From positions 390,399 through 454,398 of the forward strand of contig CDMY01000376.1 in the NCBI GenBank assembly GCA_001179505.1: a DNA stretch of 64,000 bases, read 5' to 3'. The notes beneath the pieces were generated by a model. That model had not been told where the DNA came from, did not search any database, and saw only the letters and a program-made list of their open reading frames with translations. Shown one piece after another: positions 34,753 through 61,763 of the stretch (within the stretch, counting starts at the first letter, position 1; each line of letters starts with the position of its first letter). The stretch comes from Vitrella brassicaformis CCMP3155 (lineage: Eukaryota; Protista; Chromerida). Both the position numbers and the translations under genes were made by a program.

Positions 34753-37645
34753 ATGGCGGTTTCTGTGCGGGTATCGTCGACGGTGCTGGCGGCCCCTCGA
34801 GGCACCCTGGCTCTCGTCCAGCGTCTGCCGACGGCCCCCCGAGGCGCCTCCGCCTCGAATGATTCATCGCAATCATCTCACTCTCTGTGGGGAGTTATGA
34901 AGCGAGGACGTTATTCAGGCCGAGATCTGCTTAGGACTGCTCCTCACTGCCGCACTGGCAACGCCAAAGTGGCATTTGCACGCATTATTCAGCAGCAGGT
35001 GACGGAGGGCACTACACTCATGGCTGGATGGATGGATGCCTGTGATTGATTCCTCCTGTTGACTCATGTGCAGGGCCGGTATCACCGGTTCTTCAGCTCA
35101 GCGTCGTCTGCCTCGCCAGCCATGGCTGATGAGCAGGCTGTAGGCGCTTCCCCGACAGAGGAGGCGGCGGGCCATGAGCGTGGCGATGAGGCGGGCAGCG
35201 AGGGTGCAGCGAGTGATGCGGTGGCTGAGCCTAAGCAGAACAAGCGGCTGCTGTCGTGGGCGAAGCGCAGGGCTGACTCGTGGCTGCAGAAGGGATGGCT
35301 GCTCCAGTAAGTCAACACAGACAGACAGACCCATTCATGACGCCTGTCTGTCTGTCTGTCTGTCTGTCTTTTGGGGNNNNNNNNNNNNNNNNNNNNNNNN
35401 NNNNNNNNNNNNNNNNNNNNNNNNNNNNNNNNNNNNNNNNNNNNNNNNNNNNNNNNNNNNNNNNNNNNNNNNNNNNNNNNNNNNNNNNNNNNNNNNNNNN
35501 NNNNNNNNNNNNNNNNNNNNNNNNNNNNNNNNNNNNNNNNNNNNNNNNNNNNNNNNNNNNNNNNNNNNNNNNNNNNNNNNNNNNNNNNNNNNNNNNNNNN
35601 NNNNNNNNNNNNNNNNNNNNNNNNNNNNNNNNNNNNNNNNNNNNNNNNNNNNNNNNNNNNNNNNNNNNNNNNNNNNGGGGGGGGGGGGGGAAGCGTAGGA
35701 TGCCTGAGATGCTTGTCGACTGGTATCAGAAGGTCCGGGCCGATGAGGCGGCCGCGAAGGTAAGCAAGCAACGCGGGAATGCATGACGAGAGGATACATA
35801 CATACATGGTTGTCGGGTCTGTCGGCCATTCCATTAATGCATTGCTTTCCCTCCCTCTTGTCAGTCAGAGCGGTTACGCAAGCGCGCCAGGGGCGCCCTT
35901 GAGAAGGCCATGAAGACTCATGGGTATCTATCACTCTATGGAACGAACACATACCAACCAACTCTTGCATGCATTCGTCCATCACGCCACGCCCTCTATG
36001 TGCTTGATGTGCTTGTGTGTGTGTCAGTGAGGCCGAGCCAGCGAATCTGCTGCAGTGGTACGAGATCCACCGAGAGAGGGTCCGGAAACAGAACATCATC
36101 ACCAAGGTTGGTGAGCGATTAAAGCTGGCGACAGAGAGTGAGTGAGCTGTGTCGACGGCGGCTGTGTGTTCTCTTATCGTCAGGCACGGCGCATCAGGAA
36201 GCGGCGTGCGCTGCAGCTGTGGCTGGACAACGTCAAGCTGTCCGAAGCCAAGTGAGTAGCGTAGTCAGTGAGCAATGGAGGGAAATAGATCGGTCTCGTG
36301 TGTCCTCTCGGCCTATCTCTCTGCTGTCCATCCATCCATCCATCCATCCATTCAGGAACGAAGCAGCTGACAAGGGTGTGGATACGGACGACTGGTCCGA
36401 CCAGCAATTCATAGACTGGTAAGGCAGGCAGGCAGGCCGCCTGCTCGTGGTAGGAGCTGATAGCATGGCGGCCGTGCACCACACGTGAGAACACACACAT
36501 CCATCGTTATACGTGGCTACCATCAATGCCTCCCTCTTCTGTCTGCAGGTGTCTTGGTGAGCGGCGCGCTGCGTACGACGAGAAACAGCGGAAGCGGATG
36601 CTCTCGACGGCGAGACGAGTTCTCCGAAGGAGATGTAAGCACCGAAACATACACACGCATTGCATGTATCTGTGAAGGAGGGACCAACCTGTTGTGTGTG
36701 TGTGATCGCTCATGTCTGTCCCCAGTCGATTCGGGTGAGGTTGATTTGGACCCCGAGGAGGCGGCTGAGGAGCAGATGCTGGCCTGGTACCGGGAGGACA
36801 AACGGCAAAAACTACTCCAAAGGGTATATAACATGAAAGGAAGGGAACCAACACTCGGTGGAGGTGTCTGTCGTTCATCGTGTCCATCTGGCTGGGCTGG
36901 GCTGTGCTGTGCTGTGCTGTGCTGTGTTGTGTGTATCCGTCTGTGTGTGCGTGTCTGTCCGTCTGTATGTGCAGGCGACCTCAGCAGGGAGGCGCGTGTC
37001 CAAAAAGTGTGAGAAAGATGGCACAGACCCCCCCATTGACATGGTAATCAATCATTCATTCAACCACACACGCCAACACACCACGAACCACCACACGAGG
37101 CGTCCACACAATTCTCTGCTGCTGTGATCTGATCTGCTTCTCTCGGCCTTTCTGCTGCCGCCTGCCTGCCTGCTTGTCTTGCTCAGAGCAATGCGCTTGA
37201 CGACGATGTGCTGCAGTGGTACAACACGGTCGTCCGACACAAAGAGGACCTACTCATCATAGAGGCCGACAGACTGGTGCGACAAGAGGAGGTAATGAAT
37301 GAATGCAATGCACGGACTGGACTGACTGGACAGACAGACGCAGCCAGACATACCACGTCACGTAATTTGGTCTCTCTGTCCACTGCATGCTTGCAGGAAG
37401 AGCATCAACACCACCAGCACCAGCACCAGCACGAGCCAGCGGCGAGCGAAGAAGAGCATCAGCATGCCTCCCAGCCCACCCACACACAGCCACTTCATCA
37501 GGAGAGGGCGCCAGTCAGCCTCAACGACCAGCCCAAGGACATCTGGGTGGGCGAGGAGGTGCTGCGGTCAGACGACGGTGACAAGTCTGCCAGGCAGCCG
37601 GCAGAGCAAGACAATGGCGGTGTGCAGATGCAGGCGCGGCACTAG
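34753..37645 (+). CDS. Hypothetical protein with mitochondrial-type leader and repeated L-x-W-Y helical units; spans an assembly gap
   Basis: Exon 1 [17 protein letters not shown]...QQQ splices in frame to [12 protein letters not shown]. About ten small GT-AG exons give an open frame on each side of the gap, to stop 37645. Confidence 0.65.
35377..35676. other. Assembly gap (300 N) flanked by poly-G
   Basis: N run. Confidence 0.99.
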
Positions 37646-37952: not shown

Positions 37953-40900
37953 ATGCAACAGGCGGCGTACGGCTACCCCAATGCGCAGCCCTACTCCACC
38001 CAGCAACAACAGTACCAGCAGCAGCCGCAGGGCGCCGCACAACCCCTCTCAAACCCATTCGGCGGCGGGGCGGGAGCGCCGGTTTTATCCAGCCCGTTCG
38101 GCACCCGGCAGCAGCAGCCGCAGGCGCCTCAGGCGCCCAGTCAGCCCACACAGCAGCCACCTGGTGGTGGGTTCGGACAGCCGCCCATGGGCAAGGGCAT
38201 CCCCCCGCCGCCCACCAGCGCACAAATGTACGCACAGTACGAACGACCCTTGTCTGATCAGATCTGCTGGGATGCGATGCGATGCAGGCAGATAGATGGA
38301 TCCAGACAGACAGACAGACAGACAGACAGGCGTTGTGTTCACATCACATTCTCTCTCTGTTCTGTGTGTGTGGGTTTGTTGTGTGGTTGTGTTGCTTGTG
38401 CAGGGCTGCTGGTGGGTACGGCGCTCCTCCCGCCGGTGCGGCCCCCCCTCCCACCACGGCACACGCCCCTACTAGCTTCAAACACGGAGGAACCAGACCA
38501 GTAAGGAGGAAGGACACTACCTACCGTACCAACACACCAGCCCAGCCCAGCCCAGCCACCCCGTTTGTTTTGTTTGCCTACCCTACCATGCTCCTGTCTG
38601 TCTGTCTGTCTGTCTTGTCTACCATGCTATGGTGGTGTGGTGTCCACCTACCAGGGCTACTATCCGCAGGCTGCGGCCGGCGCTGTGTCCCAGACGGGGG
38701 CTGGGGGGTATCCCGAGTACCCGGGGGTCGGGGGACAGATGCCGGGGATGCCCGGGATGCCCGGACAGGCGGTCTCGCCCACACACGACGCGCAAGCGGA
38801 AGCCATCGCGGTCAGAGAGAGAGAGAGAGAGAGAGGCAGATCAGATCAGATCAGAGTGCCAGGTTGTGTTTATCCGTGGATCGGATTGCGTTGGTTGTTT
38901 TGTTTCCCCAGAAGGAGTGCGCTGAGTTCAACGCCCCGCCGACCTTTGTCAGGCCATCGCTCACCAAGTATGTTATGTTCGTCAGGCGGACCGCACACAC
39001 ACACACACATACGAGACGAGGAAAGCCCGAAAGGACAGACAGTCCCGCATCGTATGTATGTATCCTTATGCGGTGGGTGTATGTATTGTCTGTCTATAAG
39101 GTTCCCCAACTCTCAGAACATGAAGCAGAAGGCGAAAATACCATTAGGTGGGCAGGGCGTTTGCTTGCTTCCATGCGCTGTGCGCATTTCCCATGCATCC
39201 AATCCGTCCATTCGCCCTGTCTGCCTGGCTGCCTGCAGGTGTGTTGTTCCAGCCGCTGGCCAGGAAGTATCGCGTACCAGCTGTCAACTTCGGATCTGTC
39301 GGTACGCAAACAAACCTGCCAGCCACCACACACCTCACGTGTAGCTGGCTGGCTGAATGTATGTCCGTTCGTGTGTGTGCCTGTGTGTGTGTGGGTGTGT
39401 GACTCCCTCCGTCCCTCTTCTAGGGACGGTAGTTCGTTGCAAGAGGTGTCGGACGTACATCAATCCGTTTGTGCAGTGGGAGGCCAACGGCCGCCGGTGG
39501 GTCTGCAACCTCTGCGGCTACATCAACGACACGCCAAACCACTACTACTACAACCTAGACGAAACCGTAAGACAGACAGACCTACCAGACCAGACAGACA
39601 GACCAGCGAGCGGCATGGCATACCAACAGACTCACTCAACGCACCACATCACATGTAATGTGTGTCTGTGTCTGTGTCTGTGTGTGTGGTCCATGTTATG
39701 TGTGGGACCACACACACCATGTTGTGTTGTGTTGTGTGTAGGGGAAGCGTGCCGATCGTTATGAGCGGTGTGAGCTGTCGACGGGGTCGGTCGAGTATAT
39801 TGCACCGGGCGAGTACATGGTCAGGCCGCCGCAGCCACCCGTCTTCATGGTCAGCAAGGGATACAAGAGAGAATGAACAACGAGATGCATTAATAGATGC
39901 ACTCGACTGACTGCACATACCTATGGGTCTCGATGTGTCCTGGCGTCGCGGTGTGTGTCAGTTTGTGATTGACGTGACCCTTCCGGCCGTCAACAACGGC
40001 CTCGTCGACACCGTCGTCCACGCCATCAGGGTATGTCAACCAACGTCGCACTGGCGCCTGTCAACACACACACATGCCAGACAATCAATTGTCGTGTGTG
40101 TGTGTGTTTCAGACTGCGTTGCAGAGCGAGAAGCTGCCTGGGGGCTCGCGGACACAGATCGGTGAGTCTAGATGCTTGTATGTGTGTAGGTACTTTGGTG
40201 TGTGTTGTGTTGTCTTGTGTTGTGCCGTGGGGTGTCTGTCGTGTCGGATTGTGTTGTGTTGTGTTGTGTTGCGTTCGGATGATGAGTCTGAAATTATCAC
40301 AGTTTGTGTGAGTGTGTCGTGCTGTTCACGGACTGAACCCCCGTGAAGCCGCGACGCCACACTGAACACACATACAGTTTCTGACGAACCAACACAGACA
40401 GACAGACAGAGCCCATGTGTGTGTGTGTTCGTGCGTTCATGGCTGTCCACTCACACGCGTCCCTCCTCTGCCCTCTGTGTATACTCTGTGTGTCTGTCTG
40501 TGTGTGTATGTTGTGTAGGCATCATGACGTTCGACTCGTCGATTCACTTCTACAACCTCAACGGCGGCCTCGCGCAGCCGCAGATGCTGGTCGTGTCAGA
40601 CCTAGAAGACCTGTTCCTACCTCTCCCCGTAAGCAGCTCTCGACGCAGCCGCCTGCCGGCCTGCCTCGGTGTAGCTGGCAGATGTGTGTCTGCCTGCCTG
40701 CCTGCCTGCCTGTGTCACTCAGGATGACATCCTCGTCAACGCGTCGGAGAGCGAGAAGGTGCGTGTGGCTCGGCTGCTCGTGGCATCATGGTCTTGCGGC
40801 TGTCGTGACCTTGTTCCTTCCTTTGTTTGTGTGTGTGTGTGTGTGTGTGCAGGTGGTGCAGGGTTTGCTGGACTCGCTGCCCAGCATGCATCGCAACACC

Positions 40901-43900
40901 AAAATCAACGAATCTTGCCTGGTGGGTAACTGCGGGACGCCCACCACATCCATACAACGCACAAACGTCGGCCCTCTCTCTCTGTCTGTGTGTGTGTGCG
41001 TGTGTGGTGTATCAATCAGGGGAGTGCCGTCAAGGCGGCTCACATGGCTGTCAAGCACATCGGCGGCAAGGTCCTCGTCTTCGCATCCACACTACCCACT
41101 GTTGGAGAGGTAGGTACATCCACACACACATACACACACATAAACACGGGGCCTACCATCACACGCACCGCAGACTGGCAGAGGGCGCCCCGGCTTGCAC
41201 ACCGCTGTCTGTCTTCTGTATTTCTGTGTGTTGGTGTTGGTGTGTGTGGCTGGATCGGCTGGCTGCAGCTTCAGCTCAAGTACAATCGGTACAAGCCCCC
41301 GATGCTCAACACCGAGAGGGAGGTGGAGCTGCTCAAACCTGCCGACGAGGAATACAAAGTCAGTCAGCCAGGGCATGCATGAGCACCTTGACCATAGACG
41401 CGCGTGTCATCATCATGGTCGCCGTGTGTCCTTCCTTCATGCCATGCATGCGCTTCAGGCGTTGGCTGTCGAGTTGACGAGGGTGCAGATCAGTGTGGAG
41501 CTCTTCCTCTGCCCAAACCAATACATCGTGAGCGAGCAAGAAAAGGACAAGAAAATACCCAACCCCACACAACACCCACCCACACATGCATGTGTTGTGT
41601 GTAGGACGCCGCGTCCTTGGCGCCGCTGGTAAAGTTCACGGGCGGCGACCTCCACTACTACAGCAACTTCAACGCCTCACAGCAGGGTCAGCGAGCGACC
41701 ATTACACGAATCGAGTGTGTGCCCCATCTATCTACAAACACCCATCCGTCTCTCTCCGTGTGATGTGTCTGCGCCCAGGTGACAAGTTGCGTGAGGAGCT
41801 GCTGCACGTGCTCACGAGGAACATGGGGTCAGTCAGTGAGACAGATGAGACAGACGACAGCATACACACGCGCACTCAGACGGACAACAACATTTGTGCG
41901 TGTGTGTGTGTGTGTGCGTGTGTAGTTGGGAGGCGGTGATGCGCATCCGCGTGTCGCGTGGGTGGAAGATCACCAACTTCTTCGGACACCTCTACATCAG
42001 GTACACACACTCTCGATTGCAATGCGATGTGTGCACCAGATACACCCAGACAGGCACACACAAGCCAGCCCACCCATTGTGCCGTCTCTCTCTCTCTCTC
42101 TCTCTCTGTATGTGTGCGTGTGTGTTGGTCATGTGTGTATGCCTGTTTGTTAAGGGGGATGGATCTGTTGGTGGTGCCCAACTGCCACAGCGACCAGACC
42201 TTCTCAATTTGCCTCGACCTGGAGGAAAACGTGAGCCACTTGAGAGAGGGAGGAGGACTGTGTGTCGATACATCCATCTTATGTATGACTGACTCAGGTC
42301 ATTCCCGAGCCGATTGTGTGCGTCCAATGCGCCCTGCTCTACACCAACTCTGACGGTAGGTACACACACACACACAGGTGGCTGAACTGGGCTGCCCGGC
42401 CCGCATCGCTCGCATGGGAAGATATCTACATACATTCATATTCGGTCGGGGTGTGTATGTGTGTGTGTCAATCAGGGGAGCGCCGCATCCGTGTGCACAC
42501 CTACTCGATGCCCGTCACACAGAGCTTCCCAGTACGCTACGCTCACACCACCCACACCACCCATCCCATACGCTGGTTGGTTCGTTTTGTTTGTCCAGGA
42601 GATGATGAACTCGATGGACGCCCAGGCGGCGGCGAGCCTACTCTCCCAACAAGCCGTCGACCAGGTAGGTACACGCACTCACACACTGGCACTTGTATCA
42701 TATGTGTGTGTCTTCATACCATGACATGCCTGTGTTGTGTTGACGTGATCAGGCGTTGAAGGCCAAGTTGGCTGACGCGCGGACGTTTCTGCAGTCGTCG
42801 TGCAGCCAGATCGTGGCCAGTGCGGGGACAGGCACGCAGGGCGGGGAGCCGCTGAGGCTGCTGCCGCTCTACGTCATGGGCATGCTCAAGTCAATCGCAT
42901 TCAGGGCTACCAACGACGGTAGGTCCCCTCGGCCGACACACACATTCCATCCCCCCCCCCCCCCCCCCCCCCCCNNNNNNNNNNNNNNNNNNNNNNNNNN
43001 NNNNNNNNNNNNNNNNNNNNNNNNNNNNNNNNNNNNNNNNNNNNNNNNNNNNNNNNNNNNNNNNNNNNNNNNNNNNNNNNNNNNNNNNNNNNNNNNNNNN
43101 NNNNNNNNNNNNNNNNNNNNNNNNNNNNNNNNNNNNNNNNNNNNNNNNNNNNNNNNNNNNNNNNNNNNNNNNNNNNNNNNNNNNNNNNNNNNNNNNNNNN
43201 NNNNNNNNNNNNNNNNNNNNNNNNNNNNNNNNNNNNNNNNNNNNNNNNNNNNNNNNNNNNNNNNNNNNNNNNNNTCCCCCCCCCCCCCCCCTCTCTCTCT
43301 GAGGATATGTGTGTATATGGTGGCCGGGGTGTTTGTGTGGTTGTGTTGTGTGGACTGACTGCAGTTCACCCCGACCAGCGTGTGTTCAGTTGGCTGCGTC
43401 TGGAGTCGCTGCCTGTGGACATGCAGGCGTCCTTCTTCTACCCGCGGATGGTCGCGCTGCACAACCTCGACCACACGGCGGGAACCGTCGACGAACAGTA
43501 AGTACAAAGCAAAGCCAGATGGGATGGATGGACCAAATGGATGGATGTGCGTGTGTCTGTGTGTGTGTGTCTGTCAGGGACCAGGTGCAGTTGCCTGCGC
43601 CGATGAATCTCACAAGCGAGGGCATGAGCCAGGTAGGCACACCTGCTGGCATAGCTATAAGTGACACAAAGTGCTTGTGTGGTGTTGTTCAGGACGGTGC
43701 GTTCCTGATGGAGGACGGCGAGATGATGATGATGTGGATCGGCAGGTACACACACACACACACACACACAAACACTCCACTCTGCCATGCCATCCATACG
43801 TCGCATCCGATCCTCCCTCCGTCGTGTGTATCTGTGTGTCCGCTGTCCTGTCAGGTCGATAAGTCTGAATTTCCTCTACTCTGTGTTTGGGGTGTCCTCC

Positions 43901-44512
43901 CTCGACCAACTCAACCCTGACGTGGCGGAGACACTCATCGGTCAGTCAGTCAGTACTCTCACATCGACATGATGTCAGGCAGGTCCTGTGTGCTGTGTTA
44001 TGTTGTGATTTGATTATTGTGACGCGTAGGCACCACTGGTGACCAGTTGTCATCTCGCGTCAACGCCATCATCCAGGCCATCCGGCTGGAGAGGGAGCCA
44101 CCGTACATGAAGCTCTACATCATACGACAAGGAGAACCTGCAGAAAACAGGTACACACACGTCAAGGCCACCACACACACACCTGGACGTGACCTGCAGC
44201 AATGGGTTCGTGCGTGTGTGTGTGTCTGTGTGTGTGTCGTGCCCATCATTCAGATTTTTCTCCAACCTGGTTGAGGATCGGACGCTGGGCCTCCAACTCA
44301 CCTACAACGAGTTCCTCAGCAAACTAGGTCAGTCGGTCAGCAGAGCGATCCGATCCACTCATATGGCGAGGCGCTGTGAAAAAAATAACATGTGTGTGGA
44401 TTGGATGGATGGTTGGATGGATGGCATGGATGTCTGGACTGGATGGATGCAGGGAGCCGACCCATGGGCGCAGCAGCAGCAGCAGCCCCCACAGCAACGG
44501 CCGGGCCGATGA
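37953..44512 (+). CDS. SEC24: COPII coat subunit Sec24
   Basis: Pro/Gln-rich N-terminus, zinc finger [132 protein letters not shown] and gelsolin-like GAFLMEDG. Confidence 0.95.
42975..43274. other. Assembly gap (300 N) flanked by poly-C, within a Sec24 intron
   Basis: N run. Confidence 0.99.
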
Positions 44513-45561
44513 GGCAATACTGACCGACACAACAGACCCACTGACCGACTGATGCGAGGCGTGCAGTGCATCAATGGCCGTCATGGCCCCACCCACCCAG
44601 CCATACATATTCTTCCCCCTCCCTTGCCTTGCACTCTGCCTCTCTTGCCTACTGACTGACTGACTGACTGACCCCTCTCCCTCTCTCCCTCCCTCTCTGT
44701 CTGACCTCCCGGCCGGCCGCCGGCCATCAATTAAGTAACGCATCCATACGGCGGGCAAACACGCCTGCTCCGCCCGCCACGCCCCGCCCCGCCCCGCACA
44801 GCAAGACAGGAATGGACAGATAGTGAGATCTGTAGCCAGCCAGGCAGTCCAGCTCGTCTGTGGGATGGCTGTGGTATTGCGAGCAATTCGGTGAACTGAC
44901 TGCTTGGGGAGGGAGAAGATTCATTGAATCATGAGACGCGATTTTCCGGCCTGCCTGCCTGCCTTCACTCGTGGTATCTATCTATCTACCCTAGTGGATG
45001 AATGGATGTGTTTGGGTGTTTTCAATGGATGAAGGACGCACAGGTGGATGGATGGATGACTGATGCACAGACGATGTGATAGCTCTGTCGTATGTCTGGA
45101 CACGTGTGCTTGCGTGAAGACGTACGTAATTCAGCAATCAATAAATGGAGGTCAGCTGCTGAGCACCTCCCCTCAGACACACACGCGTGACATCCATTCC
45201 ACCCGTCCATGGCATGGCATGGCATGGACCTGCCTGTCTGTCTGCACACGCCGCCACATGCAATCAATGCAGTCATGCCATGCAAGGTTAGTAAAACAAG
45301 CCACCTACGTTAATCACTCACCTCTTTGTACACCGCAGCCATACACACACACACACACACACACCCCTATACACCCTTTTCCCGTGTAATTACGATCACA
45401 CCCCACCGTCAGTCAGCGATACCAATACCACCTGCCGAACGAGACGAAACTCACTTAGGCACCACCAATATTTACCCGAGTCCCTCTCACGAAGCCTGTT
45501 TGTTTAACCAGTCGATTAATCAATCCCGCCTGCCTCCCCTTCCCGACCACTTACTTCTAAC

Positions 45562-47787
45562 CTAACCAACGACGGGGCTCATGCCGCTCCCAACCTCGCA
45601 GCTAACACCCGCACCCGTCGACATCGCCCCCTCGCTGACACGAGCCCGCTTCTGCGGCGGCGTCTCGTCACCATCACCCTTGCTATCGCCCGATGCCGCG
45701 TCATAGTCATCTTCGTCCGGCGGCGCGTCCGCCTCATGTTCTGATGAGGGGCACTGGTGTGTGTCGGAGCCGGTGGTGGTCGACGGGTTGGGGTTAGTGG
45801 ACGACGGCGGCCGTCCACTCAGGCCCAGGGCACGACGAATCGTGAGGTAGTGGCCTGGATGGACAAGACAGACACAGCCGAAATAAATGCAATGCTCTCT
45901 CTGTCGCTTCACTTGACGAACGTCTGGTTCCTTCTTTCCCCTCTGTCTATGTGTACGTACGTACCTTTGTCGACCCGCCTCAATTTCTTGGCGGATCCAT
46001 CGTCGCCGTCGCCCGAGCGGTCCCCATCGCCGTCGCCGTCCCCACTGCCCCCATCCCCCCCGCCACTGCCCCCGCCCGAGTCGCGCACCAGCCACTCCTT
46101 GGGCACCTTGTCGTCGTAAATGAACTTCTGGCAGCTCATCACGACGCTGTGCCGACGGCCGAAGATGGGCGTGTTCTCGTGCACGATCTTGGTGCCCCGG
46201 AAGATGACGACGTCGCCCTCCCGCAGGACGATGCGCAGGCCACTGAACTCCCACCTGGCGTAGTAATCTGCACCAAAGAATAGACACGACACGACGTGCA
46301 GGAATGTGTGTCTGAGGTCCGAGCACAAGGGCATCCACACTATACCTGCTGGTGTGAGTATCTTTTTCTTGTTGCCGTCCTGGTCGAGCTCGTTGTCGTG
46401 TTTCCTCTCCTTGATGAGGCTCACGTTGTGGAAGAGCAGCGACGCGGTCTTCTCCCGCCAGAGGCCGATGGGTGTTATGACCGCATGTGTGCCGTCCAAA
46501 TCCTCGTCGTCGAGGTGTGCAGCCGAGGACACGTTGAAGTTGAGCCGACACAGCGGCCACAGACCCCCCCACGCATACGGGAAATGCGTGGCCGCCTCCT
46601 CCGTACGCTTGAGTGTCGCCCGCTCGCACAGTGACGCCTTGGTCCTCATCTCCCTCTCCCTCTCGCTCGCCACCCACTCGCCCCAGGAGAACCGTTTCGG
46701 CCCATCCCATGGCGGCTGAGCACCGGCCTCATCGCCATGTGTGGTCTTGGCGGCCTTGAGCGGCGGCTCAGCGGCCGTGCTGTCGTCGGCGTCAGCATCC
46801 ATTGAGCGCGGCGTCATGCGATGGTCGGTGTCGAGAAGGGCGAGGCGGGCGAGGGCCTCCAGGTAGACGTCGCGCAGCCGGCGGACGAAGAGCTGGGAGT
46901 CCTGCAGGAAGCGCGTGACCTCGGCGCCGACCTTTTCCATGTCCTGCTCGCGGGTGGAGAGCTTCTTCTTGCGCTTCGCACCCTTGGACTCGGCTGCCTG
47001 TACTCACACAACATAACATACACACGGTTTGCTTGTCTCCGGTGATCTGCATGTGGCAGGCAACGTGTGCCTGATCTTCACCGACCTCCATGGCAGGAGT
47101 TTCCTTCATGATGGGGGCGTCGGTCTCGGGGTCCCTGGCAAACTGAAACCTGGCGCACACCCACAATTTGAGAGACAGACAGACGGTCCATATCAGCCAC
47201 CGCAGACACACCACACACATGAATGGATGCCCTACCCGAGGTCTATCATCTCTCGAGGCGGATCCGCCCGGTTAGCGTCGCGGCACTTGAAGTACTGCTT
47301 GGGTGCACGGTCCAACAACATCTCCATTGCTGACACACACACACACACACACATCTCCATCTGTCTATGTATCTGTTGGTGTACGCGTTGGCCAACCTCG
47401 CTCACCGATGAACATGTCCTTGTTCAGGCCATCGTCAATCCTCCTCCTCAACACGTGGAACAGCACCTCCCCCTCCTCAGTCATACCCACGATGTCCCGC
47501 TTCCCGTCGCCCATCTCGTCAAACCCCCGCCGTGCGAACTGCTTCTTCAGGCCGTGAGAGCCGACAATGTCTGGGTCAGACGGATGCAGCTTCACGTAAC
47601 ACACCTCACAATCGCTGCTCGGAGGCATGACGCCACTCGGCGCCCGGTGTACATGTATGTTGCTTGCAGTGTCGTCGTTCTCGTCTTCACCCATGACGGG
47701 GTCTTCTAGGCGATGGCCGTCTGCAGCTGGTGGTGGGAGCGACGGGGATGGGATGACATTGGAGGCTGCTGCAGACGGAGAGGCCAT
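45562..47787 (-). CDS. TET/JBP-family 2OG-Fe(II) dioxygenase (six exons, 615 aa as modelled)
   Basis: Exons 47787-47406, 47329-47236, 47149-47026, 46997-46346, 46267-45965 and 45854-45562 sum to 1848 nt, all GT-AG and in frame. Core motifs LNFNVSSAAHLDDED and LREGDVVIFRGTKIVHENTPIFGRRHSVV match the TET/JBP pattern N-x7-HxD ... GD-x9-H-x-N-x6-R-x-S. NLS-like KRKKK. Confidence 0.78.
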
Positions 47788-47938
47788 CCTGGCATCAACC
47801 GGGGTGACCTCTGCAGCAGCACCGCACCACGGGAAAAACCAAAGGCAACTGCTAAGCTCGCATGACGATCCGTGGGGGAAAGGACGAACGGATCCATCTC
47901 TGACCGCTGTTCGCCGTGCTGTATCGCCAGCAGTGTCC

Positions 47939-50583
47939 ATGGATACCAGCAAACCCATTCAACCGTCTGGCAGCGCCACGGCAGCGCCGAGTCTGACGGC
48001 AGCGGCCAAGAAGCAAGGGGGCGTCCAGCACTCGTCGACGATGGTGCTGAGTGCCAGAGCATGCACGCCAGACACGTCCCCATGTGATAGTGCCAGCGAG
48101 GGGTCGGGGTCGAGGGAGGAACCGGTGCAGCGGGTGCACGCTGGCCCGGATGCATCCGTTGGGGGAAGCAACTTCAAGTGTAAGATGTGGATGGATGGAT
48201 GGAAAGAAAGATCACGATGCTTAATGAGTCGTGTGTTTGTCCATATGGATGTGTCTCGTCCATCCATGCTGGCAGTGGGCAGTGTCCTGGCAGACATCGC
48301 CGACCACAGCTGCGAATTCGTCAGTGTAGATATGGGTCAGTCAGAACAGAAACAGACGGACATGCACAAGCACATGAAAGCAAACCACTGACTGAGATTT
48401 GTTCATCTGTCGGTCTGCATGTGTGTTTGCTGTGTGTGTGTGCAGAGTTCAGCGGCCTGTTCGCCAACATCGACCCCAACAGAGCGAATCTGCACGTGAG
48501 CGGCGGGGAGACACGTACACCCATGCACACAACACAGCTGCAGGCACACTGGTGCTGTGCTGCATGTGTGCCTTCCTGGACGAGGGCGTGTGGTGTGATG
48601 TGGGCAGGTGTTCTACGAAGACTGTGCGTGGAGTGTGCCGCAGTTCCTCGTGGGTACGTTTAAGAGGCAGCTTGGCTTGTTGCATCTACCTACCGCAACC
48701 TGTATGTAGACAGATCGTTTCCCTTGGTGTGTGTGTGCAGTGCAACTCGGGGTGTGCTGCGCGATGAGGGACCCGGCTGCACCAGACAGGTGGATGCTGT
48801 CGACGCACACCTTCTACGCATACCCAGCGATGGTCAGTGAGCAAACAAACAGTCAGTGCATCTTTCCATTGACTGATCTGTGCGTGTGTGTCCTGGACAT
48901 ATGTGTGTAGCGGACGGTGAGCGGGTTCGACACGCAGTCGTTCCGCTTTCTGCGTTCTGCTGGCTTCGACTTGAATAGATGGGTGGATGAGAGGTGAGTC
49001 CAAGACACACATGAATGCATGCCATGCAGCCGAGACTCCGTGTGCGTACTGTATGCGTGTGTGGCCGCCATGCCGCCATGTGTGTTGTGTCTGCTTGCAG
49101 CGTTGAGTACCTGCGGCTGGCCGACATCGAGGCGGCTGCTCCCTGCCGGGACACCAAGGTCAGTCAGCATGGATGCGATGCAGACACGCAACACATGCAC
49201 TCGTTCATATATATTTTGATGTCATTCTCACACGACGTGAATGATCGTTTCTGTGTGTCGTGTCCAGGAGCTCATCGAAGAGGGCGGCCTGCAGTGTGTT
49301 GTCAAGGGGATAATGGGCTCGGCCAAGCCACTGGTGGTGCACAATGGGCTGCTCGACCTGCTGCATTTGTACGACAAGTTCATCGGGTACTGACTGACTG
49401 CAAGAGACAGGGGACGGAAGGAGCAGAGGCACACTTTCTTTCTCTAATGGCGTGCGATGCGATGCGATGCGTCCAGTGAGCTGCCTTATCCTCTGGTGGC
49501 GTTTTGCTCCGAGTGGATGAGCCTGTTCCCCCGGGGCACCTTCGACACCAAACTCATCGCTGCCGATCTGCTGCAGCTCAGTAGCTCATCCAGGTAGGTA
49601 CTCTGGTGCCTAACACAGCACACCATTCCTGTGTATGGTGTGCTGTATATATGTTATGCATGTGCAGCAGTGCCACTGCTCTGGCCATCCTCAGATCGCA
49701 GCTGCTCAAGTACAAAGACAGACGGACAGACAGACAGACAGACAGAGATACCACTGGCGGACACAAGTGCATGTGCTGTCTCTGTCTGTCTGTCTGTCTC
49801 CTTTTGCGTCATTAAGGGCACCCCATCTCAGCAGCTTCGCCATCTACCCGTCTGCAACTGCATCCGAGGTCCGAATGACCTCAAGCACAAGACATCCTTG
49901 CAGGCCTGGCTGGCACACTAGGCTCACCTGCCTAGTTGTGTCAGGCCGCCAAGGCACACGACGCCGGCTATGACGCACTGATGACAGCGCAGGTGTTCGT
50001 CCTCGAGCTGGAGCATCTCTTCCACTCGACTAGCCCGGGGCAGCAGCAAGGCACTGCACTCAAGAGGAGGCGTCTCGACCGCCCTGCCATGTACTCACCG
50101 AAGGGGAGGGTGCACTGCACGTGTGTCGGTCGAGTCGGCGTGCATTCATGTGTGTGTGTTTGTGTCCCTATCTGCCTGTGCTGTGGGTGCAGACCGATGG
50201 AGTGGCTGGCACGGTGCGAGAGCCAGTACTTCGCCAACGTCATCTCATGTGAGTCGAGTCCGCACACACACCACACCACACCCTAATGGAAGATAGCATG
50301 ACATGACGTCTCTCTGGTTGTGTGTGGTGGGTTGGTAAATGGATGAATGCACGCAGTGACGGAGGTATCCCCGGCGTTCCTCTCCCTTACGAAGAATGTC
50401 AAGCTCAAGCCCACGCAGCCGCAACACACCCAAGCCGCCGTGAGCCACCAGTCGCGGCCTGTGGGTGTGTCTGTGTCGGCTGGCTGTGTGTCGCAGCCTG
50501 CTGCCCCAGCAGCAGCAGCAGCGGGCAGGCAGGTGGGTGACGGGGCTGGCTGTGTTGTGCTGGCGAGAGAGGGCTATCCATGA
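47939..50583 (+). CDS. PARN/CAF1-family DEDD 3'-5' ribonuclease
   Basis: Spliced GGSNFK/LGSVLADIADHSCEFVSVDM/EFSGL, FRFLRSAGFDLNRW, KPLVVHNGLLDLLHLYDKF, FDTKL and AHDAGYDALMTAQVF. Start and final exon are tentative. Confidence 0.85.
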
Positions 50584-61463: not shown

Positions 61464-61763
61464 NNNNNNNNNNNNNNNNNNNNNNNNNNNNNNNNNNNNN
61501 NNNNNNNNNNNNNNNNNNNNNNNNNNNNNNNNNNNNNNNNNNNNNNNNNNNNNNNNNNNNNNNNNNNNNNNNNNNNNNNNNNNNNNNNNNNNNNNNNNNN
61601 NNNNNNNNNNNNNNNNNNNNNNNNNNNNNNNNNNNNNNNNNNNNNNNNNNNNNNNNNNNNNNNNNNNNNNNNNNNNNNNNNNNNNNNNNNNNNNNNNNNN
61701 NNNNNNNNNNNNNNNNNNNNNNNNNNNNNNNNNNNNNNNNNNNNNNNNNNNNNNNNNNNNNNN
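61464..61763. other. Assembly gap (300 N) inside the retroelement
   Basis: N run. Confidence 0.99.

What the first reader, a model, noticed from the sequence alone, without database searches (positions are those of the whole stretch)
45562..47787. Intron-containing TET/JBP-family dioxygenase: candidate DNA base-modifying enzyme in a chromerid
Seen in sequence: a six-exon frame with HxD (HLD, 46509-46517), a distal His in HENTP (46179-46181) and R-x-S (46146-46154). It also has the upstream 'LNFN' strand, an N-terminal DIVGMTEEGEVLFHVLRR segment and a KRKKK NLS. Established: this arrangement is that of TET/JBP enzymes, which oxidise thymine to 5hmU (kinetoplastid JBP1/2, base J pathway) or oxidise 5mC (TET, algal CMD1). 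Dinoflagellates, sister myzozoans, have abundant 5hmU, and fungal/algal TET/JBP genes often travel with transposons. Inference: this is a host-integrated nuclear enzyme, with no transposase or glucosyltransferase beside it in the window. It could write an uncharacterised modified base in the lineage closest to apicomplexans. The substrate cannot be read from the sequence.
Basis: partly seen in the sequence, partly recalled or inferred. Interest (0 to 1): 0.82.

Follow-up and report, generated by a model that had tools for sequence, protein, structure and literature searches.

The report
Chromerid TET/JBP-like dioxygenase gene
An expressed six-exon gene of the alga Vitrella brassicaformis encodes an intact iron/2-oxoglutarate oxygenase whose only recognisable kin are the TET/JBP enzymes that oxidise methylated DNA bases. 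It is so divergent, with a single relative in Chromera, that family membership and substrate remain unproven.

Summary
A six-exon, minus-strand gene (47787..45562, all GT-AG) translates exactly to the public 595-aa protein CEM07676.1/A0A0G4F6D2 of Vitrella brassicaformis, which is annotated only as uncharacterized. All five junctions are present in transcript-like contigs from three runs in two studies. HLD, the distal His and R-x-S sit at the stated coordinates.

The TET/JBP reading is the best one available but falls short of formal membership:
- Pfam Tet_JBP is the only meaningful family hit (E 6e-4, 19.5 bits), below the curated cut-off of 34.9.
- An exhaustive phmmer search of 1.84 billion representatives found one relative, Chromera velia Cvel_32293. 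That protein scores Tet_JBP at E 7e-7 (29.1 bits).
- The nearest ESM Atlas clusters, by language-model features and by structure, are almost all Tet_JBP.
- No AlkB, P4H, PhyH or JmjC signal appeared.
- AlphaFold failed twice, so no comparison with PDB folds was possible.

Laid against TET2 numbering, the iron and 2OG ligands and the HxD+3 Asp are kept. The base-stacking Tyr is Ser and the N3-contacting His is Gln in both chromerids, so this is not a canonical 5mC-TET pocket.

The neighbours are housekeeping genes (CAF1, Sec24), with no transposase or glycosyltransferase. The gene is a moderately interesting new member of a known kind. The scan had not noted it before.

The parts
47406..47787 (-). 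Exon 1 (aa 1-127 plus 1 base). It holds the start codon 47787-47785, a low-complexity N-terminus, and the segment DIVGMTEEGEVLFHVLRR (47496-47443), which is weakly matched in the Chromera homologue.
   Evidence: RNA contigs reach about 47833; N-terminal match BLASTP E 0.007 in a small search space
47236..47329 (-). Exon 2
   Evidence: The joint 47406|47329 is shown by X6 record 15 and by the X2 loose end. The joint 47236|47149 is seen in X1, X2 and X6.
47086..47149 (-). Exon 3. Its donor is GAG|GT at 47085, not the GTGAAG four bases downstream.
   Evidence: The joint 47086|46997 is seen in X2 and X6, and in the X1 loose end.
46346..46997 (-). Exon 4. It holds KRKKK (46976-46962), a helical region, and the first half of the double-stranded beta-helix core: R331 (46547-46545), LNFN, H341-L-D343 (46517-46509) and D346 (46502-46500).
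   Evidence: Pfam Tet_JBP match spans aa 333-443
46268..46345 (-). Intron 4. It is 78 nt, in frame, and has no stop. It lies inside the variable loop between the two halves of the core and is removed in all RNA contigs seen.
45965..46267 (-). Exon 5. It holds the second half of the core: H427 (46181-46179), then R436-H-S438-V-V440-M-S442-C-Q444-K445 (46154-46125). A Gly/Asp-rich linker follows (46085-45990).
   Evidence: invariant columns in alignment A2
45562..45854 (-). Exon 6. It encodes an acidic, low-complexity tail with PPQKRARV (45660-45637) and the stop codon 45564-45562.
   Evidence: the joint 45965|45854 is seen in X1, X2 and X6
47788..47938 (.). The 151-bp interval between the start codons of this gene (minus strand) and the divergent CAF1-family gene (plus strand, ATG at 47939). 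It is a likely shared promoter region.
   Evidence: NCBI gene calls on CDMY01000376.1; sequence; transcript contigs end at 47822-47833

Best explanation
This is a real, transcribed, single-copy nuclear gene of Vitrella brassicaformis. It encodes a catalytically intact Fe(II)/2-oxoglutarate dioxygenase that belongs to, or branches just outside, the TET/JBP (5-methylpyrimidine dioxygenase, Pfam PF12851) superfamily. Inferred mechanism: H341, D343 and H427 hold Fe(II). R436 and S438 hold the C5 carboxylate of 2-oxoglutarate. A flipped-out nucleic-acid base is then oxidised at an exocyclic methyl group. The substrate is most probably thymine (giving 5hmU) or 5-methylcytosine in DNA. The base pocket is not that of 5mC-type TETs: Asp346 at HxD+3 matches NgTET1 and JBP1, Ser442 replaces the stacking Tyr/Phe, and Gln444 replaces the N3-contacting His. 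I therefore lean slightly towards thymine or a non-canonical substrate. Shown here: the gene model, its expression, the conservation of catalytic residues, and TET/JBP as the nearest family. Inferred: the fold, the nucleic-acid substrate, the nuclear location and the product.
For: Gene and expression:
- The exon model is identical to the public protein.
- All five junctions appear in RNA-like contigs of three runs from two studies and are absent from the DNA-like run.

Family signal:
- Pfam Tet_JBP is the top hit for the whole protein (E 0.007), for the read-through ORF (E 0.004) and for the core (E 6e-4, 19.5 bits).
- The only homologue among 1.84e9 representatives, Chromera Cvel_32293, hits Tet_JBP at E 7e-7 (29.1 bits). 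It also carries a precomputed PF12851 annotation.
- No other 2OG family appears at E<=10 except WelO5 at 0.03-0.2.

ESM Atlas:
- By features, 24 of 30 (Vitrella core) and 26 of 30 (Chromera) nearest clusters are Tet_JBP. Scores are 0.95-0.96, with 198-203 of 256 features shared.
- By the Atlas's own structure model, Tet_JBP is the only named family among the 30 nearest models (TM 0.60 over aa 297-456).

Motif register against TET2 numbering taken from papers:
- H1382-R-D1384-x-H1386-N1387 corresponds to H341-L-D343-D-E-D346.
- R1896-x-S1898-x-V1900-x-Y1902-x-H1904-K1905 corresponds to R436-H-S438-V-V440-M-S442-C-Q444-K445.
- R, S, V and K match. Sources: PMC6244454, PMC6625141, PMC8256090, PMC11804724.
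- All these positions are invariant, or V/A, between Vitrella and Chromera.

Substrate context:
- TET2 H1904Q raises thymine oxidation fivefold (PMC11804724).
- Vitrella has a DNMT4-like gene, so 5mC is also a possible substrate (PMC10538959).
Against: - Pfam scores are below the gathering cut-off of 34.9 bits for both proteins.
- No hit came from PDB sequence or profile searches, PHROGs or NCBIfam, the profile word search, or the viral and metagenome locus scans.
- Both AlphaFold runs failed (pLDDT 37.6 and 30.7). The fold evidence therefore rests on a medium-confidence ESM model (pTM 0.58), and a TM of 0.6 between jelly-roll folds discriminates poorly.
- The stacking aromatic residue and the His of the TET pocket are missing.
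- The second Arg, described as strictly conserved in 5mC dioxygenases (TET2 R1261, NgTET1 R224), could not be placed. R331 is only a candidate.
- No DNA-binding domain was detected.
- No modified base has been reported for chromerids.
- The motif register was made by eye from published residue numbers, not by a tool alignment.
Confidence: 0.6

Rival explanations
1. It is a 2OG/Fe(II) oxygenase of another, undescribed class that hydroxylates a protein or a small molecule. Its resemblance to Tet_JBP would then reflect only the shared jelly-roll core and generic HxD...H...RxS motifs.
For: Scores are below the Pfam cut-off. No solved-structure hit was found. The TET base-contact Tyr and His are absent (with PMC8256090 and PMC11804724). 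No DNA-binding module was found. The family is confined to two chromerids.
Against: Among the many 2OG families in Pfam, only Tet_JBP scores, and it does so independently for two proteins that are 30% identical. Language-model and structural neighbours are Tet_JBP and nothing else that is named. The HxDxxD and R-x-S-x-V-x-x-x-x-K register matches TET2 beyond the generic ligands.
Confidence: 0.2
2. It is a genuine TET/JBP derivative that has moved to another nucleic-acid substrate or reaction. Examples are RNA m5C or m5U, an N-methylated base, or a CMD1-like reaction that uses a co-substrate other than 2OG.
For: The pocket is remodelled (Ser442 and Gln444, conserved in both species). TET enzymes are reported to act on RNA m5C and on N-methylated bases (PMC11804724, Discussion). 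There is no partner glycosyltransferase or adjacent methyltransferase.
Against: R436 and S438, the 2OG C5-carboxylate ligands, are intact, which argues for ordinary 2OG use. Nothing in the sequence points to RNA. Basic NLS-like patches (KRKKK, PPQKRARV) fit a nuclear protein, but this is inference only.
Confidence: 0.15
3. It is a catalytically dead or decaying remnant, for example of an old transposon-borne TET/JBP gene, that is transcribed but has no enzymatic role.
For: There are long low-complexity stretches. It is an orphan family. Fungal TET/JBP genes ride on transposons (PMC12730594).
Against: All iron and 2OG ligands are intact and invariant across the deep Vitrella-Chromera split. The frame is open and correctly spliced. 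The gene is single-copy among housekeeping genes, with no terminal repeats other than microsatellites and no transposase.
Confidence: 0.05

Closest known systems
Chromera velia Cvel_32293 (EukProt EP00820_P023749), uncharacterised
   Same: It is the only detectable homologue. The core is 30% identical, with every catalytic and pocket residue invariant (W-G...R-L-N-[FY]-N...A-H-L-D-D-x-D...K-I-V-H...R-R-H-S...S-x-Q-K). There are weak collinear matches in the N-terminal strand and in a C-terminal basic patch.
   Different: The Chromera protein lacks the roughly 25-aa loop insert and the long helical insert of the Vitrella protein. It carries a C-terminal eight-Cys, FYVE/RING-like finger (Pfam FYVE_2 E 0.0075, sub-threshold) that Vitrella lacks.
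TET 5mC dioxygenases (human TET2; Naegleria NgTET1; phage clade A/B 5mYOX)
   Same: It is the best Pfam family. The shared features are the HxD...H triad, HxD+3 polar residue (Asn in TET2, Asp in NgTET1 and here), the R-x-S-x-V...K strand after the distal His, and a variable insert that splits the jelly roll.
   Different: Scores are below the Pfam cut-off. Ser replaces Tyr1902/Phe295 and Gln replaces His1904/His297. The spacing from the distal His to the Arg is 9 residues rather than 15. There is no Cys-rich or CXXC domain. The Arg equivalent to R1261/R224 has not been located.
Kinetoplastid JBP1/JBP2 thymidine hydroxylases
   Same: They are in the same superfamily. The Asp at HxD+3 is reported to align between NgTET1 D234 and TbJBP1 (PMC11804724). 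The absence of the TET His is compatible with a thymine enzyme.
   Different: No J-DNA-binding domain or SNF2 domain is present. No glucosyltransferase is nearby. No sequence hit to JBPs was obtained in the exhaustive search.
Dinoflagellate TET/JBP homologues CryTJ1/AmpTJ1 (5hmU synthases, PMC11572971)
   Same: They come from the sister myzozoan lineage. They are likewise highly divergent TET/JBP-like proteins with HxD and H...R motifs, and they are proven to make 5hmU on DNA.
   Different: No dinoflagellate protein was retrieved by phmmer at E<=1e-3, so orthology is unsupported. A direct comparison could not be run because no sequences were available by reference.
Chlamydomonas CMD1 (5mC glyceryl transferase of the TET/JBP family)
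   Same: It is an algal TET/JBP-family enzyme with a non-canonical reaction, and serves as a precedent for neofunctionalised members. This comparison rests on my own knowledge and was not tested here.
   Different: CMD1 uses vitamin C as co-substrate. Here the 2OG-binding R-x-S is intact. No comparison was run.

Membership tests
TET/JBP superfamily (Pfam PF12851 Tet_JBP; '5mYOX') | Score at or above the curated Pfam gathering cut-off (34.9 bits) | tested here: not met
   The Vitrella protein scores 16.0-19.5 bits (E 0.007 to 6e-4). The Chromera homologue scores 25.8-29.1 bits (E 7e-6 to 7e-7). Tet_JBP is nevertheless the top and only meaningful family.
TET/JBP superfamily (Pfam PF12851 Tet_JBP; '5mYOX') | HxD...H facial triad for Fe(II) | tested here: met
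   H341, D343 and H427 are invariant in the Chromera homologue.
TET/JBP superfamily (Pfam PF12851 Tet_JBP; '5mYOX') | [quoted passage not shown] | tested here: met
   R436-H-S438 is invariant. The TET2 residues are taken from PMC6625141 and PMC8256090. The match is at sequence level only.
TET/JBP superfamily (Pfam PF12851 Tet_JBP; '5mYOX') | Second Arg bonding C1 of 2OG (TET2 R1261, NgTET1 R224) | tested here: inconclusive
   An invariant R331 lies 10 residues before H341. NgTET1 R224 lies 5 residues before its His. Equivalence cannot be judged without a reliable model (PMC8256090).
TET/JBP superfamily (Pfam PF12851 Tet_JBP; '5mYOX') | Jelly-roll fold closest to TET/JBP structures | tested here: inconclusive
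   AlphaFold gave pLDDT 37.6 and 30.7, so no PDB fold search was run. In the ESM Atlas's own model (pTM 0.58), Tet_JBP is the only named family among the 30 nearest models, with TM 0.60.
TET/JBP superfamily (Pfam PF12851 Tet_JBP; '5mYOX') | Oxidation of a 5-methylpyrimidine in nucleic acid | not testable with these tools
   This needs an enzyme assay or nucleoside LC-MS/MS.
5mC-specific TET dioxygenases (TET1-3, NgTET1, phage clades A/B) | Base pocket: polar residue at HxD+3, a stacking Tyr/Phe (Y1902/F295), and a His contacting N3 (H1904/H297) | tested here: not met
   D346 is present at HxD+3. In the R-x-S-x-V register, however, the Tyr position is Ser442 and the His position is Gln444, in both chromerids (PMC8256090, PMC11804724). 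The register was set by eye from published residue numbers.
JBP1/JBP2 (base J pathway) | J-DNA-binding domain (JBP1) or SNF2 ATPase (JBP2), and a base-J glucosyltransferase in the genome or neighbourhood | tested here: not met
   No Pfam domain other than Tet_JBP was found in any part of the protein. The neighbours are CAF1 and Sec24. Genome-wide absence of a glucosyltransferase was not tested.
AlkB / other 2OG-Fe(II) oxygenase families (P4H, PhyH, TauD, JmjC) | Pfam match to the respective family | tested here: not met
   No such family appeared at E<=10 for either protein. The only other hit was WelO5, at E 0.03-0.2 over the distal-His strand.

The most novel reading that the evidence does not exclude
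Vitrella and Chromera may share a lineage-restricted, deeply divergent branch of the TET/JBP superfamily. Its remodelled base pocket (Ser/Gln in place of Tyr/His) would make it a thymine hydroxylase, or the writer of a still unknown oxidised base in chromerid nuclear DNA. Enzymatic base oxidation would then exist in the photosynthetic sisters of Apicomplexa independently of the dinoflagellate TJ enzymes, and would have been lost on the way to the parasites.
Probability: 0.3. Interest if true: 0.7.

Novelty: new member of a known kind. Interest (0 to 1): 0.5.

Why it matters
Chromerids are the free-living reference point for apicomplexan biology and the sister group of dinoflagellates, whose DNA is full of enzymatically made 5hmU. 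No oxidised base and no TET/JBP enzyme has been described for chromerids: I found no paper linking them, and the protein is 'uncharacterized' in public databases. A verified enzyme would show whether DNA base oxidation is ancestral in Myzozoa, and it would give a natural example of a TET-like pocket lacking the canonical Tyr/His pair. That matters for how 5mC-versus-T selectivity evolves, given that TET2 H1904Q shifts activity towards thymine. The question is directly testable with one recombinant protein and one nucleoside LC-MS run. The importance is moderate, because TET/JBP homologues are already known from many eukaryotic lineages, and this gene has no apicomplexan counterpart.

Tried and rejected
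Searches and predictions that led nowhere:
- **PDB sequence searches.** I queried with the read-through ORF, the two-sequence profile and the distal strand of the Chromera protein. Only Gly/Ser-linker artefacts, ABCA1 and L3MBTL3 noise came back.
- **Word-indexed searches.** The Vitrella ORF and the Chromera protein each found only themselves. The profile search (A3, candidates of 142-453 aa, E<=10) found nothing. Longer or shorter kin are outside those length windows.
- **Exhaustive phmmer.** One relative only.
- **Locus scans.** Viral and metagenome contigs were scanned with motifs AHLDD[EH]D and F[RH]G[TY]KIVH. Pattern matches occurred, but none was confirmed.
- **Family libraries.** PHROGs and NCBIfam gave nothing.
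- **tblastn against phages.** One hit at E 2 was a DUF932 protein of mycobacteriophage Nanosmite, a chance match.
- **AlphaFold2.** Two-row alignments gave pLDDT 37.6 and 30.7. I therefore did not run Foldseek or VIA searches, because matches of such models are meaningless.
- **Reference sequences for profile-profile comparison.** I tried to obtain bona fide phage TET/JBP sequences by reference, but no supplements or accessions are held.
- **Chromera locus context.** The protein is not on record in the contig index.
- **Transposon hypothesis.** Only (GT)n microsatellite matches lie around the gene, and there is no transposase.

- No self-joined spliced protein was sent to any search or fold.
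- I used exon and ORF references, and the identical database protein P0001 that a tool returned.
- The exons were joined only inside one script, to test identity with P0001.
Full report
**Observation**

The region was read on the minus strand. An ATG at 47787-47785 opens a frame that continues through six exons to a stop at 45564-45562:
- 47787-47406
- 47329-47236
- 47149-47086
- 46997-46346
- 46267-45965
- 45854-45562

The five introns are 76, 86, 88, 78 and 110 nt, and all are GT..AG.
- HLD at 46517-46509 (H341, D343)
- the distal His at 46181-46179 (H427, in VHENTP)
- R-H-S at 46154-46146 (R436, S438)
- LNFN at 46544-46533
- DIVGMTEEGEVLFHVLRR at 47496-47443
- KRKKK at 46976-46962

A word search with the 343-aa open frame 45909-46940, which reads through the in-frame intron 4, returned one protein, P0001. 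P0001 is 595 aa and is recorded as CEM07676.1 / UniProt A0A0G4F6D2, 'unnamed/uncharacterized protein' of Vitrella brassicaformis CCMP3155. My exon coordinates translate to exactly that sequence. The join was made only inside a script, for this identity test. I used exon or ORF references and the database protein instead.

**Expression**

One run search and one read-laying run were available. Contigs of runs X1 and X2 (one study) and X6 (another study) lie on the exons and skip exactly 45855-45964, 46268-46345, 46998-47085 and 47150-47235. All four skipped stretches read CT..AC on the plus strand, which is GT..AG on the gene's strand.

Intron 1 contains a (GT)n run that the tool masks, so it does not appear in the joint table. 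It is still bridged. X6 record 15 passes from 47406 to 47329 without extra letters. In X2, the loose end at 47406 reads the first bases of exon 2. X1's loose end at 47085 likewise reads into exon 4, confirming the intron-3 joint.

The junction at 47086|46997 settles the choice between two possible donors for exon 3. Run X3 holds the whole locus unspliced and near-identical, and is probably the DNA source. The runs are only guessed to be RNA, and they are contigs, so they show presence and junctions but not levels or strand. Transcript contigs end at 47822-47833, about 40 nt upstream of the ATG.

**Context**

NCBI gene calls on contig CDMY01000376.1 (454 kb, GCA_001179505.1) place two genes beside this one:
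- A CAF1-family gene lies head-to-head with it. Its ATG is at window 47939 on the plus strand, leaving 151 bp between the two start codons.
- A Sec23/Sec24-family gene is convergent, at 37953-44523 on the plus strand.

Further out are two unannotated genes. Repeat searches around the gene found only (GT)n and (GTCT)n microsatellites and no terminal inverted repeats. There is no transposase or glycosyltransferase.

**What the protein is**

Pfam gives Tet_JBP (PF12851) as the top hit in every form tested. The curated cut-off is 34.9 bits.

| Query | E-value | Bits |
|---|---|---|
| Read-through ORF | 0.004 | 16.9 |
| Full protein | 0.007 | 16.0 |
| Core, aa 290-458 | 6e-4 | 19.5 |

The match covers profile positions 82-162 of 164, that is, from the HxD strand to the end. 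The only other entry is WelO5 (E 0.03-0.2), which is also a 2OG-dependent enzyme, over the distal-His strand. No AlkB, P4H, PhyH, TauD or JmjC model appears at E<=10.

The word search and family scans left the protein open, so I used the exhaustive phmmer search (aa 55-460 against 1.84 billion representatives). It returned the query and one further protein, P0002 (E 1e-4). P0002 is Chromera velia Cvel_32293 and is 554 aa.

Pairwise BLASTP gives E 1e-13 over the core at 30% identity. The conserved pattern is W-G...R-L-N-[FY]-N-x-x-S-x-A-H-L-D-D-x-D-x-x-G...P-x-G...H-N-x-S...G-x-x-x-V-x-R-x-G...F-x-G-x-K-I-V-H...R-R-H-S...S-x-Q-K. The Chromera core scores Tet_JBP at E 7e-7 (29.1 bits). The database also carries a precomputed PF12851 hit for it. 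That score is statistically significant, though still under the curated cut-off.

The chain of inference therefore runs: Vitrella protein to Chromera protein (secure), then Chromera protein to Tet_JBP (significant E-value, sub-threshold by curation).

Independent of alignment statistics, the ESM Atlas look-alike search gave the following:
- By language-model features, Tet_JBP clusters were 24 of the 30 nearest for the Vitrella core (score 0.95, 199-201 of 256 features shared).
- For the Chromera protein they were 26 of 30 (score 0.96).
- The remaining neighbours were unannotated diatom or fungal clusters.
- By the Atlas's own structure model of the Vitrella protein (pTM 0.58), Tet_JBP was the only named family among the 30 nearest models. 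The match is a phage cluster, TM 0.60 by the query over aa 297-456.

By the tool's own calibration, a first hit of 0.95 arises about once in 100 for shuffled proteins. These results are supportive, not proof.

**What failed**

- PDB sequence and profile searches gave only linker artefacts and noise.
- PHROGs and NCBIfam gave nothing.
- The profile word search and the viral and metagenome locus scans confirmed nothing.
- A phage tblastn hit was a DUF932 protein.
- Both AlphaFold jobs on two-row alignments failed (pLDDT 37.6 and 30.7). I therefore ran no Foldseek or VIA comparison with TET2, NgTET1 or CMD1.
- I could not obtain reference TET/JBP sequences by reference for an hhalign test.

**Active-site reading**

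I used published TET2 residue numbers:
- Fe ligands H1382, D1384 and H1881, with neighbours R1383, H1386 and N1387 (PMC6244454).
- 2OG ligands R1261, R1896 and S1898, and DNA-recognition residues H1904 and K1905 (PMC6625141).
- Pocket residues V1900 and Y1902, and the statement that R1261 (NgTET1 R224) is strictly conserved in 5mC dioxygenases (PMC8256090).
- N1387 and H1904 hydrogen-bonding N4 and N3 of 5mC, with Y1902 stacking on the base (PMC11804724).

The chromerid sequences can be laid in register as follows.

| Species | First strand | Second strand |
|---|---|---|
| TET2 | H1382-R-D1384-x-H1386-N1387 | R1896-x-S1898-x-V1900-x-Y1902-x-H1904-K1905 |
| Vitrella | H341-L-D343-D-E-D346 | R436-H-S438-V-V440-M-S442-C-Q444-K445 |
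| Chromera | H-L-D-D-H-D | R-H-S-L-A-F-S-V-Q-K |

The metal and 2OG ligands, the Val and the Lys are kept. The HxD+3 residue is Asp, as in NgTET1 D234, which PMC11804724 aligns with an Asp of TbJBP1. The stacking Tyr is Ser and the N3-contacting His is Gln, and both are invariant between the two chromerids.

PMC11804724 reports that TET2 H1904Q raises thymine oxidation fivefold and proposes that Gln can bond N3-H and O2 of thymine. This is why I lean slightly towards thymine or a non-canonical substrate rather than a classical 5mC pocket. 5mC is not excluded, because Vitrella has a DNMT4-like methyltransferase, CEM15752 (PMC10538959).

This register was made by eye from residue numbers, not by a tool alignment, and it is inference. 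An invariant R331, ten residues before H341, is a candidate for the C1-binding Arg, but it cannot be assigned without a structure.

**Architecture**

From N-terminus to C-terminus, the Vitrella protein contains:
- a low-complexity N-terminus;
- a short strand-like segment (aa 98-115) weakly matched in Chromera (E 0.007 in a small search space);
- a roughly 170-aa helical and low-complexity insert containing KRKKK;
- the split jelly-roll core (aa about 323-447), with a 25-30-aa loop insert that Chromera lacks and in which intron 4 lies;
- a Gly/Asp-rich linker;
- a basic patch weakly matched in Chromera (E 0.015);
- an acidic tail with PPQKRARV.

No DNA-binding, CXXC, SNF2 or J-binding domain was detected. 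The Chromera protein ends in an eight-Cys, FYVE/RING-like finger (FYVE_2 E 0.0075, sub-threshold) that is absent from Vitrella. Nuclear localisation is inferred only from the basic patches.

**Comparison with the known**

Dinoflagellate TET/JBP homologues CryTJ1 and AmpTJ1 are proven 5hmU synthases and are described as highly divergent (PMC11572971). That paper does not mention chromerids. No dinoflagellate, apicomplexan or kinetoplastid protein was retrieved here, so orthology with them is unsupported.

Phage 5mYOX work notes that thousands of divergent members escape the Pfam model (PMC13229309). A sub-threshold score is thus not unusual for real members. Full-text searches found no paper linking Vitrella or Chromera with TET/JBP, 5hmC or JBP. 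Earlier notes of this scan on this genome do not mention this gene.

**Verdict**

The gene is real, expressed and host-integrated, and it encodes an intact 2OG/Fe(II) dioxygenase whose nearest and only recognisable family is TET/JBP. Formal membership is not established, for three reasons: the score is below the Pfam cut-off, the fold is not verified, and the 5mC-type pocket is not conserved. The function is untested.

My probability estimates are:
- about 0.6 that it is a TET/JBP-type oxidase of a DNA 5-methylpyrimidine;
- about 0.15 that it is a TET/JBP derivative with another nucleic-acid substrate;
- about 0.2 that it is another class of oxygenase;
- about 0.05 that it is inactive.

It is a new, very divergent, chromerid-restricted member of a known kind. 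TET/JBP homologues are widespread in eukaryotes, and this one has no apicomplexan counterpart. It does make the question of oxidised bases in chromerid DNA directly testable.

Noticed in passing
window 47788-47938 and 47939-50286 (+): A CAF1-family (PF04857) deadenylase gene lies head-to-head with the dioxygenase gene. Only 151 bp separate the two start codons, and transcript contigs of the dioxygenase end at 47822-47833. This is a likely bidirectional promoter of about 100 bp.
   Followed up: partly
window 47795-47706 (-): An out-of-frame ATG lies 8 nt upstream of the annotated start codon, inside the transcript contigs. It opens a 29-codon ORF (MPGWPLRLQQPPMSS...TAIA*) that overlaps the main start. 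It may be a regulatory overlapping uORF or simply leaky scanning.
   Followed up: no
window 46268-46345 (-): Intron 4 is 78 nt, in frame and free of stop codons. Its retention would add 26 residues inside the variable loop of the jelly roll. Only the spliced form was seen in the contigs.
   Followed up: partly
P0002 (Chromera velia Cvel_32293) aa 450-515: The Chromera homologue carries a C-terminal eight-cysteine, cross-brace-like finger (C-x2-C...C-x2-C-x4-C-x2-C...C-x2-C; Pfam FYVE_2 E 0.0075, below threshold). The Vitrella protein has no such finger. It could be a targeting module that was lost or gained after the split.
   Followed up: partly
window 45200-45561 and beyond (lower coordinates): RNA-like contigs run collinear for at least 360 nt past the stop codon. 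One of them (X1 record 1, 2434 nt) continues 1.7 kb beyond 45200, towards the convergent Sec24 gene (37953-44523, +). This suggests a long 3' UTR, or overlapping 3' ends merged by an unstranded assembly.
   Followed up: no
window 35377-35676, 42975-43274, 61464-61763: There are three assembly gaps of exactly 300 N. The second lies inside the Sec24 gene span.
   Followed up: no
window 47332-47352, 45345-45366, 43748-43770: (GT)n/(AC)n microsatellites recur in introns and UTRs around the gene. They account for all the 'inverted repeats' found and caused the reads tool to mask intron 1.
   Followed up: yes
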